Shown piece after piece: positions 518 to 42,779 of a stretch of 64,000 bases of DNA (within the stretch, counting starts at the first letter, position 1; every line of letters starts with the position of its first letter). The stretch lies in sequence record MZ501268.1. One strand, written 5' to 3'. Below the pieces are notes generated by a model. That model saw only the letters and a list, made by a program, of their open reading frames with translations. It was not told where the DNA came from and did not search any database. The position numbers and the translations under genes are program-made.

Positions 518-2665
518 ATGCAAACTCCTGAAGACAAAAACAAAGGCAAAGATCAGCAGCCAACTGATCAGCAGACGCCTTCCAATTCCGCGATGGGTGA
601 TGCGTTAAGCGCGGCGCAACAGAAGCAGAGTCAGCAGCAGCCACAAGGGCAGCAAACTCCGCCTCCTACAGCGCAGCAACCGCAGCAGAATGCTCAACCA
701 GCGCAAGCAGCAACACAGCAACAGCAACACACTCCTCAATTTCATCAGACTGTAGGTAACAGCAACGTGAACAATTCTACTATTCCAAACAACGGCAACG
801 ATCAGCAGGCGCCACGTCAGTCACGTATCTACGGCATGAACGAACGCCGTGAACGTATCTTCGACGCGACCGCTCATGGCGAAAACTTCAAAGTTGCGCT
901 GGAAGCAACCAAAGAAGTGCTGGAAGGTTACGAAGATAAAGGCTTCAACAAGTCTTTCTTCCTGGTGCCGGTCACTGATGTGTCTCTGCACTGTAACGGC
1001 CTGGCGTATGTGTCTGTGTTCAACTTCGGTGGTACCACCAAAGCCATCACCTACACCCTGATGCTGGAAAACACCGGTTCTCAGCTGAAGCCTCAGCGCG
1101 GTAATGACCCGATCACCGGCGAACCGTTTGAGATCCCACGCATGACCGGTTCTCAGTACGACAACACCTACTGGTCTGTTGTACAGCGTCTGGTCGGCCA
1201 TCGCATCGGTAACAACGCAGAAGTGCTGGATGCCGGCGCTTGTGTTATCCACTCAGAAATGAAGTGGGACGACAAGTCTGCAATCAAACAGCTGCTGAAC
1301 AACGCAGAAAACGCCACCATGGCGTATGCGAACAGCCTGTCCGGTTACCGCATCGAGCATCCGTTCAACATCGCTCAGGAAGTTGATCCACAGATCGACC
1401 GTATCACTGCAGGCTTCAACTTCAACCCGCAGCCGATGTTCACTGTCGATGGTCAGCCAATCCGTAACGACGTTGAAATCAAACTGTCTGCTTACGCTGA
1501 AGGCGCTGGTCAGGTTCAGACTACCGAACCGATCACTACCGTTAACGGCTACGTGGAACTGATCGCTGCACCACAGCAGCAGATGGGCTTCCAGCAGCAG
1601 ATGATGATGGGTATGAACCCACAGCAGCAGATGCAGTTCTATCGCCGCTTCTACCCGCAGTTCACCATCACGTCAACTGGTACCGGTATCTCTAACGCAC
1701 AGGGTCCTGAGTTCCAGCTGCTGGCGCTGTTCGCTGCTTCACTGATTGGTGAAAACAGCAACTGGCATCACGCGTTTGCGCCGAAGATGGTAAACGGTGT
1801 CGATATCAACGATATCGGTGCGATCAACTACGAACTGAAAATGGGTCTGGAAAGCCCAGATGACCGTCCGAAGAAGATCATCACCAAAGACCACAGCTTC
1901 AACACGCAGTCTCTGCATCAGCTGCTGTACACCGCATGCCATGAATCCATGTCAATCGCGCTGGACATCGAAGAAACTGGTACCCGTACCTGGGTGAACT
2001 CCATGCTGCTTCTGGCAGGTGGTCAGCCAAGCGGTAACGCTGCACAACTGAGCCCACAAGGTCAGCTGGCGCACAAAGCAATCATCCAGGCTGCGAACAA
2101 CCTGACCAACGGTGAGTTCAGCAAGCACTTCACTGACCAGAACCAGCTGATCGCGGTTCGTGACGGTACCCGTATTCAGGGTGGTTACTACGTCTCTAAA
2201 GACAACCATCAGAAAATGGACATCCGTAACGTCGACCTGCTGGCGGTTCTGAACTTCGTCGGTGAAACTGATCCACGCATCGTGGAAGAGTGGAAGATGA
2301 TCACCAGCTCTACGTCTGGTATGTCTACTCCGAAACGTGTTGCACTGCGTCAGCAGAAACTGCAGCAGCTGCTGGGTGAGTCTTTCGTACTGAAAGCTTA
2401 CTACGAGCGTGTAGTGATCAACTGGGCATTTACCGATGCGCTGCGTAAAGCAGTAGTAGCGGCTGGCCTGGTAGTGCGTCCGGAAAATACCAACATGCAG
2501 TACAACGTGCAGAGCTACGGTACGCCAATGGCGCAGCTGTACGGTATGCCTACTAACATCGCAAGTTCCCTGCAGCAGGGTTCTTTCGCAACTGATAACC
2601 AGGGTCGTGTTGTTAACCTGGCTCAGTTCCGTACTGGCGGTGCATTCGGCGTGTTCGGCGGCTAA
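518..2665 (+). CDS. chmA: Chimallin (phage nuclear shell protein, phiKZ gp54-like) with Q-rich N-terminal extension
   Basis: 715 aa, strong codon bias, early promoter, and position directly upstream of the gp55-like RNAP subunit as in phiKZ. Assignment rests on synteny and size. Confidence 0.8.
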   Translation: MQTPEDKNKGKDQQPTDQQTPSNSAMGDALSAAQQKQSQQQPQGQQTPPPTAQQPQQNAQPAQAATQQQQHTPQFHQTVGNSNVNNSTIPNNGNDQQAPRQSRIYGMNERRERIFDATAHGENFKVALEATKEVLEGYEDKGFNKSFFLVPVTDVSLHCNGLAYVSVFNFGGTTKAITYTLMLENTGSQLKPQRGNDPITGEPFEIPRMTGSQYDNTYWSVVQRLVGHRIGNNAEVLDAGACVIHSEMKWDDKSAIKQLLNNAENATMAYANSLSGYRIEHPFNIAQEVDPQIDRITAGFNFNPQPMFTVDGQPIRNDVEIKLSAYAEGAGQVQTTEPITTVNGYVELIAAPQQQMGFQQQMMMGMNPQQQMQFYRRFYPQFTITSTGTGISNAQGPEFQLLALFAASLIGENSNWHHAFAPKMVNGVDINDIGAINYELKMGLESPDDRPKKIITKDHSFNTQSLHQLLYTACHESMSIALDIEETGTRTWVNSMLLLAGGQPSGNAAQLSPQGQLAHKAIIQAANNLTNGEFSKHFTDQNQLIAVRDGTRIQGGYYVSKDNHQKMDIRNVDLLAVLNFVGETDPRIVEEWKMITSSTSGMSTPKRVALRQQKLQQLLGESFVLKAYYERVVINWAFTDALRKAVVAAGLVVRPENTNMQYNVQSYGTPMAQLYGMPTNIASSLQQGSFATDNQGRVVNLAQFRTGGAFGVFGG

Positions 2666-39941: not shown

Positions 39942-40595
39942 ATGTTAGAACTATTGATGGCGAGAGGGTTATCGGGCAAGGTCACCATCCCAGAAGCCGA
40001 TGCCAACACTTTGTTTAGGATGGTTGATTTCAAAACAACCTCTGACGTCAAGGATAAAGGCCCTAACACCATTGCGGTGACGCCTTCAGGAATGAAAGTT
40101 GGTACGGACGCTTTCGCCAGTTATATGTTGTTTGATGGTGCGGGATATTTCGGCATTGCTAACACCGCCCTGTTGGCACGGAACAACGTTGAACTTAACT
40201 TCATTATTGGATCAGTGACGTATGTTACCGCGAGCTATGGTGAAGCGATCTTTGATACCCGCCCTGTTAGCTCAAACGGTGATAACCTGTATCACCTGAT
40301 GGGATTGGATGTTGCCACTGCTGATCCCGCCAGGTTTTATCTCAGCTATCCATCGAATAAGGCGGTCTACTCGCCAGTAATGAATGTTAATGATGGTCCG
40401 GTATTGATTACAATAAGGATCACCACGACAGGGTCTTACCTATATATCAACGGTAAACTGATAGGCCAGCCGTCGACTACAGTCGGTGCCCTGCGAACCA
40501 ATAATTTAAAAGTTGGGTTAGGGGCGTTTAAAAGCGCCGGTGTTCCTAACTTTAGAGGACGGATGTACTATATGGACATAAAGGCGATCGTTTAG
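39942..40595 (+). CDS. LamG/ConA-like beta-sandwich protein with MLELL N-terminus, possible tail accessory
   Basis: VLITIRI..SYLYING..LKVG..FRGRM pattern typical of ConA-like folds. Confidence 0.6.
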   Translation: MLELLMARGLSGKVTIPEADANTLFRMVDFKTTSDVKDKGPNTIAVTPSGMKVGTDAFASYMLFDGAGYFGIANTALLARNNVELNFIIGSVTYVTASYGEAIFDTRPVSSNGDNLYHLMGLDVATADPARFYLSYPSNKAVYSPVMNVNDGPVLITIRITTTGSYLYINGKLIGQPSTTVGALRTNNLKVGLGAFKSAGVPNFRGRMYYMDIKAIV

Positions 40596-40819: not shown

Positions 40820-40834
40820 ACTGCTGAGGTAGTA

Positions 40835-41254
40835 ATGACTGATAAATCGGAGATCTCACACGGTGGTGGTGATCAGCCTATGGAAAAAGAGCAAAGCAAC
40901 TTATCCGTACTGGTGAATTATTCCACAGGTGTGATGGAAGGTGACCGTTTTAGTTATTCGGTTGCATTGGCGCTGTTGAAAGACGGCATCAAAATCAAGC
41001 GCGAGGAATGGAGTAATGCCTTCCTGGTGTTTGTGCCGGGTACCCAGAATGTTGAACTACCCAAAGGGTCACCGTATGAAGTCGCACTCCACGGTAAGAA
41101 GTCCGTTGCCAATATTCGTCCTCATGTAGACCTATACACTGAGTATGGGGAATTTGAAGTCGGCTGGACACCTACTCAGCCAGACCTTCATGCACAAGAC
41201 TGGATGATTGTCTTAGACAAACCATCCGTCAATGAAGACGAAGATAACTCATAA
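40835..41254 (+). CDS. tad2: DUF2829 / Tad2-like nucleotide-sponge anti-defence protein
   Basis: F.Y..AL.LLK.G.KI.R.EW...GW.PTQ.DL.A.DW.IV matches the DUF2829/SPO1 Tad2 signature as recalled. Confidence 0.7.
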   Translation: MTDKSEISHGGGDQPMEKEQSNLSVLVNYSTGVMEGDRFSYSVALALLKDGIKIKREEWSNAFLVFVPGTQNVELPKGSPYEVALHGKKSVANIRPHVDLYTEYGEFEVGWTPTQPDLHAQDWMIVLDKPSVNEDEDNS

Positions 41255-41257
41255 TTC

Positions 41258-41288
41258 AAAGGAGGGCTTCGGCTCTCCTTTTATGCCC
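41258..41288 (+). terminator. Hairpin followed by TTATGCCC
   Basis: AAAGGAGGGC-TTCG-GCTCTCCTTT-TATGCCC. Confidence 0.75.
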
Positions 41289-41303
41289 ATTAAGGAATAC
41301 GTG

Positions 41304-41660
41304 ATGAACAAAGAATTTGATATCGTACTTGACACTCGTGGTGATCTTGCTGGCATGTACCAATTACTGGTTGCCCGGATCAACACCCTATTGCGGGCTG
41401 GGGTACTCTACCACGAGGTGGCAATTACGCAATGGTCACTCTACCATAAAGGGTTGTTGGTAAAAGGGGGTGACACAATTCATGCTTCCTTGTTACGTCA
41501 CTTCTATCACGATGTGACTACTAACACATTCGGTGGCGGGTTCATGACATTCGAGATCTTCGATGACATTGAGCGCTACTATCAGGTAGATGACCTGTAT
41601 GCCGGCTACAACATGGATGATCTGGAGTTGTCAATTACCGTGACCGTTACCGCACCTTAA
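41304..41660 (+). CDS. Tandem paralog A (VxITxW family)
   Basis: Start at ATG 41304; EVAITQWSLY. Confidence 0.7.
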   Translation: MNKEFDIVLDTRGDLAGMYQLLVARINTLLRAGVLYHEVAITQWSLYHKGLLVKGGDTIHASLLRHFYHDVTTNTFGGGFMTFEIFDDIERYYQVDDLYAGYNMDDLELSITVTVTAP

Positions 41661-41669
41661 GGGATTCCC

Positions 41670-42035
41670 ATGAAAGAACTCTTTAACATGAAGTTCGATA
41701 CCCGTGATGCGTCATTTACCGATCAACTGGATTTGCTGCAATCCCGTATCAAGAGCTTCTCTAAACGTGGCACAGCGATTAAGGATGTGGCGGTTACTAG
41801 TTGGCAGCTGTTTTCAAACAACATGGCGGTGGTCGGCGATGATACCACTTACGTCACCATCATCAGCAGCTACCAGTATGATGTTGAGCAGCAGTGTGTC
41901 GTTGGTGGTTCCAGTGCGGTAGATACTCTCAGAGCGATCTGGTCGGCATATGGCCCTGACTCGACACTCCCACGTTACGGGTCTGTGCCGGGCGCTATCG
42001 ACATTCAATACACAATTACTGTCTTTACTGTATAA
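41670..42035 (+). CDS. Tandem paralog B
   Basis: DVAVTSWQLF; N-terminal FDTR matches LDTR of paralog A. Confidence 0.7.
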   Translation: MKELFNMKFDTRDASFTDQLDLLQSRIKSFSKRGTAIKDVAVTSWQLFSNNMAVVGDDTTYVTIISSYQYDVEQQCVVGGSSAVDTLRAIWSAYGPDSTLPRYGSVPGAIDIQYTITVFTV

Positions 42036-42045
42036 AGGATTTGTT

Positions 42046-42432
42046 ATGTCACTTAGAGCAAAAGATTTCTATCTCCCGTTGACGTCTGCTGAGTCATTGG
42101 ATTTTAAACTAAATAAAGATACCTGGCAGGCTGATTGCACGGATATGCATAAACGCCTTACTGACAAGATGATCAGCCGGCGTATCCAGGCGGTGTATAT
42201 TACGGCCTGGGATCTGTTTGACGAACACGGTAAGATACGGGGTAGTCAGCAGAAACTGAAGCTTGATATCACTTCTTGGTTCGTCAGCCCGAAAGGTCCG
42301 ACTAACAACACAACCATTGATCCCGTCAGTTATGCGTTCCAGATCAATCAACATCCTAGCGTTCGCACTCCTTGGGTACGGGCATTGCAAATGAACATCA
42401 AACTTATCGTGATCTTTAATAAGGGAGAGTAA
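42046..42432 (+). CDS. Tandem paralog C
   Basis: Start at ATG 42046 (AAGGA SD); AVYITAWDLF. Confidence 0.7.
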   Translation: MSLRAKDFYLPLTSAESLDFKLNKDTWQADCTDMHKRLTDKMISRRIQAVYITAWDLFDEHGKIRGSQQKLKLDITSWFVSPKGPTNNTTIDPVSYAFQINQHPSVRTPWVRALQMNIKLIVIFNKGE

Positions 42433-42779
42433 TGGAAATTGAACACACGCTGGATCTTAGCCACGGCTGGGATCCGTTTAATCGGCTTAAAGCTTCCTTC
42501 GTAGCAGGTAAACGCCCAGAGGCCATTTACATTACTGCTTGGCAAGCCTACGGTTATAAAAGCAATCTCTTGGGAGAAGATAAAGTATTAAGAGGCGAGT
42601 GTAAAGAATGCCGGGTAGATATTACTCACATCTTTTTCCCTAGCCGTCCGGAAATACTGATCGGGTTATCCAGTTTCATTAACACCATTAACCGGGATAG
42701 TCATGTGCGTGTACCGGACTGGACCGGCTCGATCACCATGTGCTTTGAATTGATCTTAGATTATACAGATAAGATTTAA
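42432..42779 (+). CDS. Tandem paralog D
   Basis: AIYITAWQAY; TAATG coupling. Confidence 0.7.
   Translation: MEIEHTLDLSHGWDPFNRLKASFVAGKRPEAIYITAWQAYGYKSNLLGEDKVLRGECKECRVDITHIFFPSRPEILIGLSSFINTINRDSHVRVPDWTGSITMCFELILDYTDKI

What the first reader, a model, noticed from the sequence alone, without database searches (positions are those of the whole stretch)
40835..41254. Tad2/DUF2829-like signalling-nucleotide sponge in a nucleus-forming phage
Seen in sequence: FSYSVALALLKDGIKIKREEW...GWTPTQPDLHAQDWMIV. Established: SPO1 Tad2 (DUF2829) sequesters Thoeris gcADPR and some CBASS cyclic dinucleotides, and the phage nucleus blocks DNA-targeting but not second-messenger defences. Inference: a complementary anti-Thoeris/CBASS function. 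It has a ~30-aa N-terminal extension and lacks the usual GWNGK (REEWSN here), so ligand specificity may differ.
Basis: partly seen in the sequence, partly recalled or inferred. Interest (0 to 1): 0.65.

Follow-up and report, generated by a model that had tools for sequence, protein, structure and literature searches.

The report
Divergent Tad2 sponge in Erwinia jumbo phage
This 139-residue gene of the nucleus-forming Erwinia jumbo phage AH06 is a real but unusually divergent member of the known Tad2 family, whose members soak up bacterial immune alarm molecules; the ligand pocket is remodelled, so what it binds is unknown.

Summary
ORF 40835-41254 (+) is gene AH06_290 of Erwinia phage AH06, annotated "hypothetical". 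It matches Pfam PF11195 (Tad2-like) at 49.7 bits against a cut-off of 25. Its AlphaFold2 model finds only solved Tad2 structures as significant Foldseek hits. AH06 carries chimallin and PhuZ, and its close relative RAY is experimentally nucleus-forming.

The gene is present in all 17 Agricanvirus records found. It is absent from phiKZ, 201phi2-1, Goslar and PCH45, so it is a lineage accessory gene. It is under strong purifying selection (dN/dS 0.06-0.12), including the 36-residue N-terminal extension. The RAY orthologue gp273 was detected by mass spectrometry.

The clade sits on a very long branch. It keeps the invariant core (W59, W111, Q115, D117, D122, W123). It alters near-invariant pocket positions: G58 to E/D, N60 to S/K/N, a 2-residue loop deletion, and S114 to T/N/S. 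Variation within the clade clusters in the pocket segments.

The insertion is the short type, so HgmTad2-style cyclic-dinucleotide binding is unlikely. Erwinia genomes do carry Thoeris, including the Macro-ThsA type II form, and CBASS-type cyclases.

Best reading: a cytoplasmic signal sponge, most likely against Thoeris, ligand unresolved. It is a new member of a known kind. The tetramer prediction could not be run.

The parts
40835..41254 (+). CDS AH06_290, 139 aa, Tad2-like protein (stop codon 41252-41254 included)
   Evidence: ORF list. GenBank annotation. PF11195 at 49.7 bits. Only PF11195 copy in the 275-kb genome. dN/dS 0.06-0.12 against RAY and a 287-kb metagenomic relative.
40826..40829 (+). 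Shine-Dalgarno GAGG, 5 nt upstream of the ATG
   Evidence: Sequence. Conserved in RAY and L010, together with the ATG.
40835..40942 (+). N-terminal extension, codons 1-36, acidic (pI 4.35), predicted disordered for residues 1-27
   Evidence: pLDDT below 50 for residues 1-27. Translated and constrained: dN/dS 0.03-0.06. In codons 1-15, RAY versus L010 shows 6 synonymous and 0 non-synonymous codon differences. No significant similarity to the N-domain of long-form Tad2 relatives (0.9 bits).
40943..41215 (+). Tad2/DUF2829 core domain, residues 37-127. Pocket-forming segments are residues 57-62 (41003-41020) and 110-121 (41162-41197).
   Evidence: Pfam residues 40-126. pLDDT 89-97 per 10-residue block over residues 41-120. 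The 24 Foldseek matches with E <= 0.001 are all Tad2 structures (16 rows shown), TM 0.63-0.88 on the target. Residue mapping to SPO1 Tad2 W25/N26/W73/S76/T78/D79 gives W59/S60/W111/T114/P116/D117.
41216..41251 (+). Short acidic C-terminal tail, residues 128-139, variable in length among sister phages (proteins of 139-150 aa)
   Evidence: Alignments. pLDDT below 50 for residues 136-139. pI 4.05.
41258..41281 (+). Conserved RNA hairpin (10-bp stem, UUCG loop) 4 nt after the stop codon, followed by a T-run. Possible transcript 3' end or terminator.
   Evidence: RNA fold: MFE -16 kcal/mol, centroid -15.1, z -2.5. RAY keeps it with a perfect stem. The 287-kb relative L010 has a wholly different stem sequence with a GAAA loop at the same place.
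518..2662 (+). Context: chimallin (major nuclear shell protein) gene of AH06, in the same window
   Evidence: 90% identity over all 711 residues of RAY gp222, which is annotated 'major nuclear shell protein chimallin'.

Best explanation
AH06_290 encodes a divergent member of the Tad2 (PF11195/DUF2829) family of phage immune-signal sponges. By analogy with solved Tad2 proteins, it most likely forms a homotetramer built from two V-shaped dimers. Pockets at protomer interfaces would sequester a small nucleotide-derived alarm molecule made by a host abortive-infection system. The most probable target is a TIR-produced ADP-ribose derivative of a Thoeris system, so that the effector is never switched on.

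Such defences act through diffusible cytoplasmic signals and effectors. The chimallin shell protects only the DNA, so a sponge complements the nucleus. The gene is an accessory acquisition of the Agricanvirus lineage, not part of the chimallivirus core.

What is shown here: family membership, fold, expression of the orthologue, purifying selection, the pocket remodelling, and presence of Thoeris and CBASS-type genes in the host genus. What is inferred: tetramer, ligand binding, which ligand, and cytoplasmic site of action.
For: **Family and fold.**
- PF11195 scores 49.7 bits against a cut-off of 25.
- PDB sequence hits are only Tad2 proteins: MoTad2 1.8e-5, SptTad2 1.9e-4, SPO1 Tad2 0.025.
- The AF2 core has pLDDT above 90, and all 24 significant Foldseek hits are Tad2 structures.

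**Conserved residues.** The family-invariant residues G51, R56, W59, G110, W111, Q115, D117, D122 and W123 are all kept. Among them, W59, W111 and D117 are the equivalents of W25, W73 and D79, three main gcADPR contacts of SPO1 Tad2.

**A real, selected, expressed gene.**
- dN/dS is 0.06-0.12.
- It is present in 17 of 17 Agricanvirus records.
- RAY gp273, the orthologue, was detected by LC-MS/MS of lysate at 18.7% coverage (PMC6690015 Table 3; gene number).

**Target systems exist in the host genus.**
- ThsB_TIR is in 8 of 50 Erwinia species representatives and SMODS cyclase in 5 of 50.
- One genome has a complete ThsB-ThsA(Macro)-ThsB operon, which is type II Thoeris.

**Precedent.** phiKZ, also nucleus-forming, carries the Tad1 sponge.
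Against: - The canonical pocket is altered at positions that are near-invariant elsewhere: G58 to E, N60 (the SPO1 N26 equivalent, which contacts phosphates) to S, a 2-residue deletion of the GK(G) loop, S114 to T, and the T78 equivalent to P.
- The Pfam score of 49.7 bits is well below the 79-102 bits of typical relatives.
- The clade sits on a stem of 2.65 substitutions per site.
- Across Acb2, Tad1 and Tad2, 19 of 84 homologues tested inhibited none of seven defence systems.
- There is no RNA or timing data.
Confidence: 0.6

Rival explanations
1. It is a functional sponge whose remodelled pocket binds something other than the type I Thoeris signal 3'cADPR. Candidates are His-ADPR (type II Thoeris), N7-cADPR (type IV), a Pycsar cNMP, or a signal not yet described. 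This overlaps with the best explanation and differs only in the ligand.
For: - The best PDB sequence match is MoTad2, the His-ADPR and cUMP binder.
- The T78 equivalent, which hydrogen-bonds adenine in SPO1 Tad2, is not T in any clade member; it is P, Q or E. N60 and S114 also depart from the family norm.
- Erwinia carries Macro-ThsA type II Thoeris.
- 9 of 20 variable sites in the clade fall in the 18 pocket-segment residues (Fisher p = 2e-4). That pattern fits specificity tuning.
- Tad2 homologues are documented to have diverse ligands.
Against: - In the tree the clade does not group with the enterobacterial clade that holds the Tatumella morbirosei Tad2 homologue. That homologue is probably TmoTad2, a reported type II Thoeris inhibitor. 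The clade groups, weakly, with the Koot / Erwinia-prophage group.
- No residue-level rule for His-ADPR specificity was available to test.
- I set the segment boundaries for the clustering test after seeing the alignment.
Confidence: 0.3
2. It has a Tad2 fold but is no longer a signal sponge. After capture by the jumbo-phage lineage it took on another role, for example a virion-associated or structural accessory protein. The pocket variation would then reflect relaxed constraint at former ligand sites.
For: - Very long stem branch, low Pfam score, and loss of near-invariant G58 and N60 plus the loop deletion.
- The genes immediately upstream encode the virion RNA polymerase beta' subunit and a phrog_6011 'virion structural protein'.
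- The gene is separated from the preceding ORF by 15 nt and followed by a hairpin.
- 19 of 84 tested sponge homologues (Acb2, Tad1, Tad2) were inactive.
Against: - The two tryptophans and the aspartate that clamp the ligand, and the rest of the invariant core, are strictly kept in all five clade variants despite dS of 0.5-1.2.
- N61 is invariant in the clade and may substitute for N26.
- No evidence for any alternative function was found.
Confidence: 0.2
3. It is a sponge against CBASS cyclic dinucleotides, like HgmTad2 and SptTad2, as the first reader suggested alongside Thoeris.
For: - Some Tad2 proteins bind cGG or 3'3'-cGAMP at a second site.
- SMODS cyclases occur in 5 of 50 Erwinia species representatives.
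Against: - CDN binding needs the 35-41-residue insertion between beta2 and beta5. AH06 has 26 residues, like the SPO1 type (24), which showed no shift with any cyclic nucleotide other than gcADPR.
- HgmTad2 is the weakest PDB sequence match (E 1.1).
Confidence: 0.08
4. It is an AcrIIA7-like anti-CRISPR. DUF2829 was first reported as a Cas9 inhibitor.
For: HgmTad2 is the protein once named AcrIIA7.
Against: - Li et al. could not reproduce any Cas9 inhibition in vitro or in vivo.
- A nucleus-forming phage is already shielded from DNA-targeting Cas nucleases.
Confidence: 0.02

Closest known systems
MoTad2 / ModTad2 (Myroides odoratus prophage; PDB 9EIB, 8V3E)
   Same: - Best PDB match by sequence (E 1.8e-5, about 30% identity) and by fold (TM on target 0.76-0.88, rmsd 1.4-3.5 A).
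- Short insertion type; shares the W...W-x-P-S/T-x-x-D...D-W core.
   Different: - MoTad2 keeps the GWNGKG loop; AH06 has E-E-W-S-N-A with a 2-residue deletion.
- AH06 adds a 36-residue N-terminal extension and an acidic tail.
- MoTad2 binding of His-ADPR and cUMP/cCMP is experimental. Nothing is measured for AH06.
SPO1 Tad2 (gp34.65; PDB 8SME/8SMF/8SMG)
   Same: - Founding family member with the same fold (Foldseek E 2e-6 to 3e-5).
- W25, W73 and D79 correspond to W59, W111 and D117; T65 corresponds to T102.
- Insertion of similar length (24 vs 26 residues).
   Different: - Only about 22-26% identity.
- N26 to S60, S76 to T114, T78 to P116, D67 to Y104, H71 to E108.
- SPO1 Tad2 has 89 aa with no extensions.
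HgmTad2 (AcrIIA7) and SptTad2
   Same: Same fold and family. The gcADPR-site residues W21, W87 and D93 have equivalents in AH06.
   Different: They have a 35-41-residue insertion that forms the cyclic-dinucleotide pocket. AH06 lacks it (26 residues).
Tad2 homologues of Enterobacterales phages and prophages (Pectobacterium phage Koot/Momine, an Erwinia sp. P6884 prophage, Tatumella morbirosei prophage)
   Same: Nearest relatives outside the clade, at 35-41% identity over the domain. The tree places the Agricanvirus clade, weakly, beside the Koot / Erwinia-prophage group.
   Different: These are roughly 90-aa canonical GWNGKG proteins on short branches, in phages of 40-100 kb. The Agricanvirus clade is separated from them by a stem of 2.65 substitutions per site.
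phiKZ gp184 (Tad1)
   Same: A signal sponge carried by a nucleus-forming jumbo phage. It has an N-terminal part in addition to the sponge domain.
   Different: - Unrelated fold (Tad1, not Tad2).
- The gp184 N-terminus is wedged in the capsid, and the sponge part is freed by the head protease and injected.
- No such evidence exists for AH06_290, and its N-terminus has no S/A/G-x-E motif.

Membership tests
Tad2 / PF11195 (DUF2829) | Sequence match to the family profile above the curated threshold | tested here: met
   49.7 bits against a cut-off of 25, E 5.3e-13, covering profile positions 2-73 of 73. The six-frame search of the whole genome gave 50.4 bits.
Tad2 / PF11195 (DUF2829) | Tad2 fold: N-terminal helix, antiparallel sheet, short helices in the beta2-beta3 and beta4-beta5 loops | tested here: met
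   AF2 elements are H41-49, E54-56, E63-67, E70-74, H80-84, E91-94, E97-101, H115-119 and E123-125, with core pLDDT above 90. All 24 Foldseek hits with E <= 0.001 are Tad2 entries.
Tad2 / PF11195 (DUF2829) | Canonical ligand-pocket residues (SPO1 W25, N26, W73, D79; also S76, T78) | tested here: inconclusive
   W59, W111 and D117 are kept. N26 becomes S60, with N61 adjacent and invariant in the clade. S76 becomes T114 and T78 becomes P116, and the loop is 2 residues shorter.
Tad2 / PF11195 (DUF2829) | Homotetramer of two V-shaped dimers | not testable with these tools
Tad2 / PF11195 (DUF2829) | Binds and sequesters an immune signalling nucleotide; rescues phage from Thoeris, CBASS or Pycsar | not testable with these tools
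   Needs biochemistry and plaque assays. No paper in the held library reports an Agricanvirus Tad2.
Tad2 / PF11195 (DUF2829) | Small protein encoded by a phage or prophage | tested here: met
   139 aa, in the lytic jumbo phage AH06.
CDN-binding Tad2 subgroup (HgmTad2/SptTad2/SaTad2) | 35-41-residue insertion between beta2 and beta5 that forms the cyclic-dinucleotide pocket | tested here: not met
   The AH06 insertion is 26 residues; 65 of the 75 aligned domains have 23-28.
Chimalliviridae (nucleus-forming phages), for the host genome | Encodes chimallin; close kinship to a phage shown to build a nucleus | tested here: met
   Chimallin is 90% and PhuZ 85% identical to the RAY proteins. The RAY nucleus was shown by microscopy and cryo-ET.
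Chimalliviridae core genome | Gene shared by all nucleus-forming phages | tested here: not met
   PF11195 is absent from phiKZ, 201phi2-1, Goslar and PCH45 and present in RAY.

The most novel reading that the evidence does not exclude
The Agricanvirus Tad2 is a re-specialised sponge. Its remodelled and still diversifying pocket would capture a signal other than 3'cADPR: His-ADPR from the Macro-ThsA Thoeris systems found in Erwinia, or an ADPR-derived signal not yet described. Its constrained, disordered 36-residue N-terminal extension might serve to load it into the virion, so that it is delivered with the DNA before the nucleus is built, as reported for phiKZ Tad1.
Probability: 0.2. Interest if true: 0.65.

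Novelty: new member of a known kind. Interest (0 to 1): 0.38.

Why it matters
A 2026 review states that Tad1 of phiKZ is the only anti-defence protein described so far in jumbo phages (PMC13282480). The phage nucleus is understood to protect against DNA-targeting but not signal-based defences.

A conserved, expressed Tad2 in a whole genus of nucleus-forming Erwinia phages gives a concrete, testable second example of how these phages cover that gap. Several members of this genus are studied as fire-blight biocontrol agents.

Divergent sponges have been used as baits to discover new immune signals; MoTad2 led to His-ADPR. A Tad2 with an altered pocket is therefore a reasonable bait for signals made by Erwinia or Pantoea TIR systems. 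The annotation itself ("hypothetical protein" in all 17 records) can be improved at once.

Tried and rejected
- **Origin of the N-terminal extension.** I asked whether it is a remnant of the roughly 70-residue N-domain of long-form Tad2 relatives. A profile of 11 long forms aligned residues 10-32 at only 0.9 bits. The phrog_1048 match starts at residue 1, but that is not evidence on its own. Left open and not claimed.
- **Head-protease motif.** No S/A/G-x-E motif occurs anywhere in the AH06 or L010 proteins. RAY has one, at residue 137 in its C-terminal tail. This does not support phiKZ-like processing.
- **PADLOC and NCBIfam scans** of the protein gave no hits, as expected for an anti-defence protein.
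- **Word-based homologue search** found only 4 close clusters. Distant relatives were reached through a profile-guided scan of IMG/VR (72 loci) and of GTDB genomes (21 loci). The large representative-protein search was not used, because the family scans had already settled the identity.
- **RNA evidence.** No RNA run holds the RAY locus.
- **Recurring element.** The conserved sequence after the hairpin (16-mer at 41280-41295) occurs only once in the window, so it is not a repeated promoter element.
- **Supplementary tables** of the sponge-diversity paper and the published Tad2 paper were not held. I could not check whether an Agricanvirus homologue was among the proteins tested.
- **Anti-CRISPR reading** rejected on published evidence.

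Full report
**What is there.** The window is bases 186001-250000 of Erwinia phage AH06 (MZ501268.1, 275,293 bp, genus Agricanvirus, host Erwinia billingiae). The ORF at 40835-41254 (+) encodes 139 residues and is annotated AH06_290, "hypothetical protein". A GAGG ribosome-binding site lies 5 nt upstream, and the preceding gene's stop codon lies 15 nt upstream of the ATG. The ATG, the GAGG and the spacing are conserved in phage RAY and in a 287-kb metagenomic relative. On the opposite strand there are only short ORFs of 52 and 58 aa, with no support.

**Family.**
- The protein matches Pfam PF11195 (Tad2-like, formerly DUF2829) at E 5.3e-13 and 49.7 bits against a cut-off of 25. The match covers residues 40-126 and the whole profile.
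- It also matches phrog_1048 at 1e-38.
- Against PDB sequences the only hits are Tad2 proteins: MoTad2 (9EIB/8V3E, 1.8e-5), SptTad2 (1.9e-4), SPO1 Tad2 (0.025) and HgmTad2/AcrIIA7 (1.1).
- An AlphaFold2 model built on a 43-sequence alignment has pLDDT 89-97 per 10-residue block over residues 41-120 (80 for 31-40, 84 for 121-130). Residues 1-27 and 136-139 are below 50.
- All 24 Foldseek matches with E <= 0.001 are Tad2 structures, with TM on the target of 0.63-0.88. The next hit has E 0.15.

Family membership is therefore secure. This is the only PF11195 copy in the genome.

**Context.**
- AH06 encodes chimallin, inside this window at 518-2662 and 90% identical to RAY gp222. It also encodes PhuZ, 85% identical.
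- RAY was shown by fluorescence microscopy and cryo-ET to build a chimallin nucleus, and AH06 is called its close relative (10.1101/2023.02.24.529968).
- The Tad2 gene is present, at 86.7% protein identity over residues 1-135, in all 17 Agricanvirus records that share the region.
- PF11195 is absent from phiKZ, 201phi2-1, Goslar and PCH45. It is a lineage-specific accessory gene, not part of the chimallivirus core.
- Upstream on the same strand lie the virion RNA polymerase beta' subunit gene, a phrog_6011 "virion structural protein" gene and a 65-aa ORF.
- Downstream, 4 nt after the stop, is a 10-bp hairpin with a UUCG loop and a T-run (MFE -16 kcal/mol, centroid -15.1, z -2.5). RAY keeps it. 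The 287-kb relative has a completely different stem sequence with a GAAA loop at the same position. This is compensatory evidence for a conserved RNA structure, perhaps a transcript end.

**Is it a working gene?**
- Pairwise dN/dS among AH06, RAY and the metagenomic relative is 0.06-0.12, at dS of 0.5-1.2.
- The N-terminal extension is equally constrained, at 0.03-0.06. In codons 1-15, RAY and the metagenomic relative differ at six codons, all synonymously. Translation from the annotated ATG is therefore supported, and the extension matters even though it is predicted to be disordered.
- The RAY orthologue is gp273. Sharma et al. 2019 list gp273 among proteins detected by LC-MS/MS of a crude RAY lysate, at 18.7% coverage (PMC6690015, Table 3). 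The gp numbering agrees with GenBank for chimallin gp222 in the same table. Because the sample was a crude lysate, this shows expression but not location.

**How it departs from the family.** SPO1 Tad2 holds gcADPR with W25, W73, N26 and D79, helped by T78, S76, I63 and T65 (10.1101/2023.05.01.538930). In HgmTad2, the mutants W21A/N22A and S90A/T92A/D93A markedly reduce binding. Mapped through the HMMER alignment and a 75-sequence alignment, the picture is as follows.

| SPO1 position | AH06 | Sister phages | 70 other relatives |
|---|---|---|---|
| W25 | W59 | W | W 69/70 |
| N26 | S60 | N or K | N 69/70 |
| preceding G | E58 | D | G 70/70 |
| GK(G) loop | 2 residues shorter | 2 residues shorter | full length |
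| W73 | W111 | W | W 70/70 |
| S76 | T114 | S or N | S 69/70 |
| T78 | P116 | Q or E | T 40/70 |
| D79 | D117 | D | D 70/70 |

- Positions 118-119 are always hydrophobic elsewhere. In the clade they are L/H/T and H/N.
- N61 is invariant in the clade and might take over the role of N26.
- R56, G51, H97, D99, Q115, D122 and W123 are kept.
- Within the clade, 9 of the 20 variable positions among residues 1-127 lie in the 18 residues of the two pocket segments, 57-62 and 110-121 (Fisher p = 2e-4). I set the segment limits after seeing the alignment.
- In a maximum-likelihood tree of 75 domains, the clade sits on a stem of 2.65 substitutions per site (SH-aLRT 100). It is nested with weak support (83-84) beside Tad2s of Pectobacterium phage Koot and of Erwinia and Yersinia prophages. 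It is not in the clade that holds the Tatumella morbirosei protein. Long-branch placement is unreliable.
- Typical relatives score 79-102 bits on PF11195, against 49.7 here.

**What this means for the ligand.** Tad2 homologues are known to differ in specificity:
- 3'cADPR for SPO1 Tad2.
- His-ADPR plus cUMP/cCMP for MoTad2.
- gcADPR plus cGG or cGAMP for HgmTad2 and SptTad2.
- N7-cADPR for Tad2_71.

Nineteen of the 84 sponge homologues tested (Acb2, Tad1 and Tad2 families together) inhibited nothing (10.1101/2025.08.24.671296).

Cyclic-dinucleotide binding depends on a 35-41-residue insertion. [quoted passage not shown] AH06 has 26, so HgmTad2-style anti-CBASS activity is unlikely.

The retained tryptophan-tryptophan-aspartate clamp argues that an ADP-ribose-type ligand is still bound. 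The changed N26, S76 and T78 equivalents argue that it may not be 3'cADPR.

**Host side.** In 50 species representatives of the genus Erwinia, ThsB_TIR proteins occur in 8 and SMODS cyclases in 5. One genome carries a complete ThsB-ThsA-ThsB operon whose ThsA is the Macro-domain type (PADLOC ThsA 1e-120), which is type II Thoeris with His-ADPR as signal. A second genome has the same pair of adjacent ThsB hits, but I did not examine it further. Targets therefore exist in the host genus. Whether the AH06 host strain has one is unknown.

**Most likely mechanism (inferred).** A homotetrameric cytoplasmic sponge removes a TIR-derived signal and so prevents activation of the Thoeris effector. This complements the chimallin shell, which shields DNA only. 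I put family membership at about 0.95, a sponge function of some kind at about 0.7, and a Thoeris-type ligand at about 0.6.

The rivals are:
- a sponge with another ligand;
- a Tad2 fold that has lost sponge function, fitting the long branch, the low score and the altered near-invariant sites;
- a CDN sponge, disfavoured by the insertion length;
- an anti-CRISPR, disfavoured by Li et al., who could not reproduce Cas9 inhibition.

**A less likely but interesting reading.** In phiKZ, the Tad1 sponge gp184 has an N-terminus wedged into the capsid. Its sponge part is freed by the head protease and injected at the next infection (10.1101/2025.11.23.690004). AH06_290 resembles this in three ways: a constrained, disordered N-terminal extension, a position directly after virion genes, and detection of the orthologue in lysate. 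Against it, the protein has no S/A/G-x-E protease motif, and the extension shows no significant similarity to anything. I give virion delivery and/or a new ligand about 0.2.

**Novelty.** The family is known. Bulk AntiDefenseFinder annotation has already reported anti-Thoeris genes as frequent among chimallin-encoding phages (PMC12625630). A 2026 review still lists phiKZ Tad1 as the only anti-defence protein described in jumbo phages (PMC13282480). No held paper mentions an Agricanvirus Tad2. This is a new, divergent member of a known kind.

Noticed in passing
window 41304-42779 (+), genes AH06_291-294: Four tandem paralogues of 115-128 aa directly after the Tad2 gene (phrog_6658 twice, phrog_11644, phrog_11536), sharing an I-T-x-W motif. 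The AF2 model of AH06_292 is very confident (pLDDT 92.6, pTM 0.84) from only 11 sequences. It has no convincing solved relative: Foldseek best E 0.33, VIA-align best Z 5.9, a generic alpha+beta sandwich. Function unknown; the array is conserved in RAY and in a 287-kb metagenomic relative.
   Followed up: partly
window 41258-41295 (+): The hairpin after the Tad2 stop codon is maintained by a completely different stem and loop sequence in a distant Agricanvirus-like contig. It is followed by a strictly conserved T-run and 13-mer containing TATG, just upstream of gene 291. This may be a transcript end plus the start signals of the next unit. The 16-mer is unique in the window.
   Followed up: partly
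L111 (Erwinia genome G009, contig 1, 1084000-1094000): A complete type II Thoeris operon, ThsB - ThsA(Macro domain) - ThsB, in an Erwinia species representative. A second genome (G033) has the same pair of adjacent ThsB hits. Another Erwinia genome (L112) holds several ThsB-like TIR genes next to a phospholipase effector.
   Followed up: partly
L012, L027, L029, L031, L039, L045, L059, L068, L080 (IMG/VR loci): Many Tad2 relatives are 'long forms' of about 165 aa, with a conserved N-terminal domain of about 70 residues that Pfam does not recognise. Another group (L054, L057, L066) has an N-terminal half that looks like a degenerate second Tad2 domain. The role of these N-domains is not described in the papers I read.
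   Followed up: partly
L007 (Salmonella phage vB_SalP_TR2, MW544066.1): Two genes annotated DUF2829 lie about 600 bp apart in one N4-like phage. The larger one (127 aa) aligns poorly with canonical Tad2.
   Followed up: no
window 39942-40595 (+), AH06_288: A 217-aa protein between the vRNAP beta' subunit gene and the Tad2 gene. It matches phrog_6011 'virion structural protein' (3e-21) and, below threshold, the concanavalin-like Laminin_G_3 family (17.3 bits against a cut-off of 27.6).
   Followed up: no
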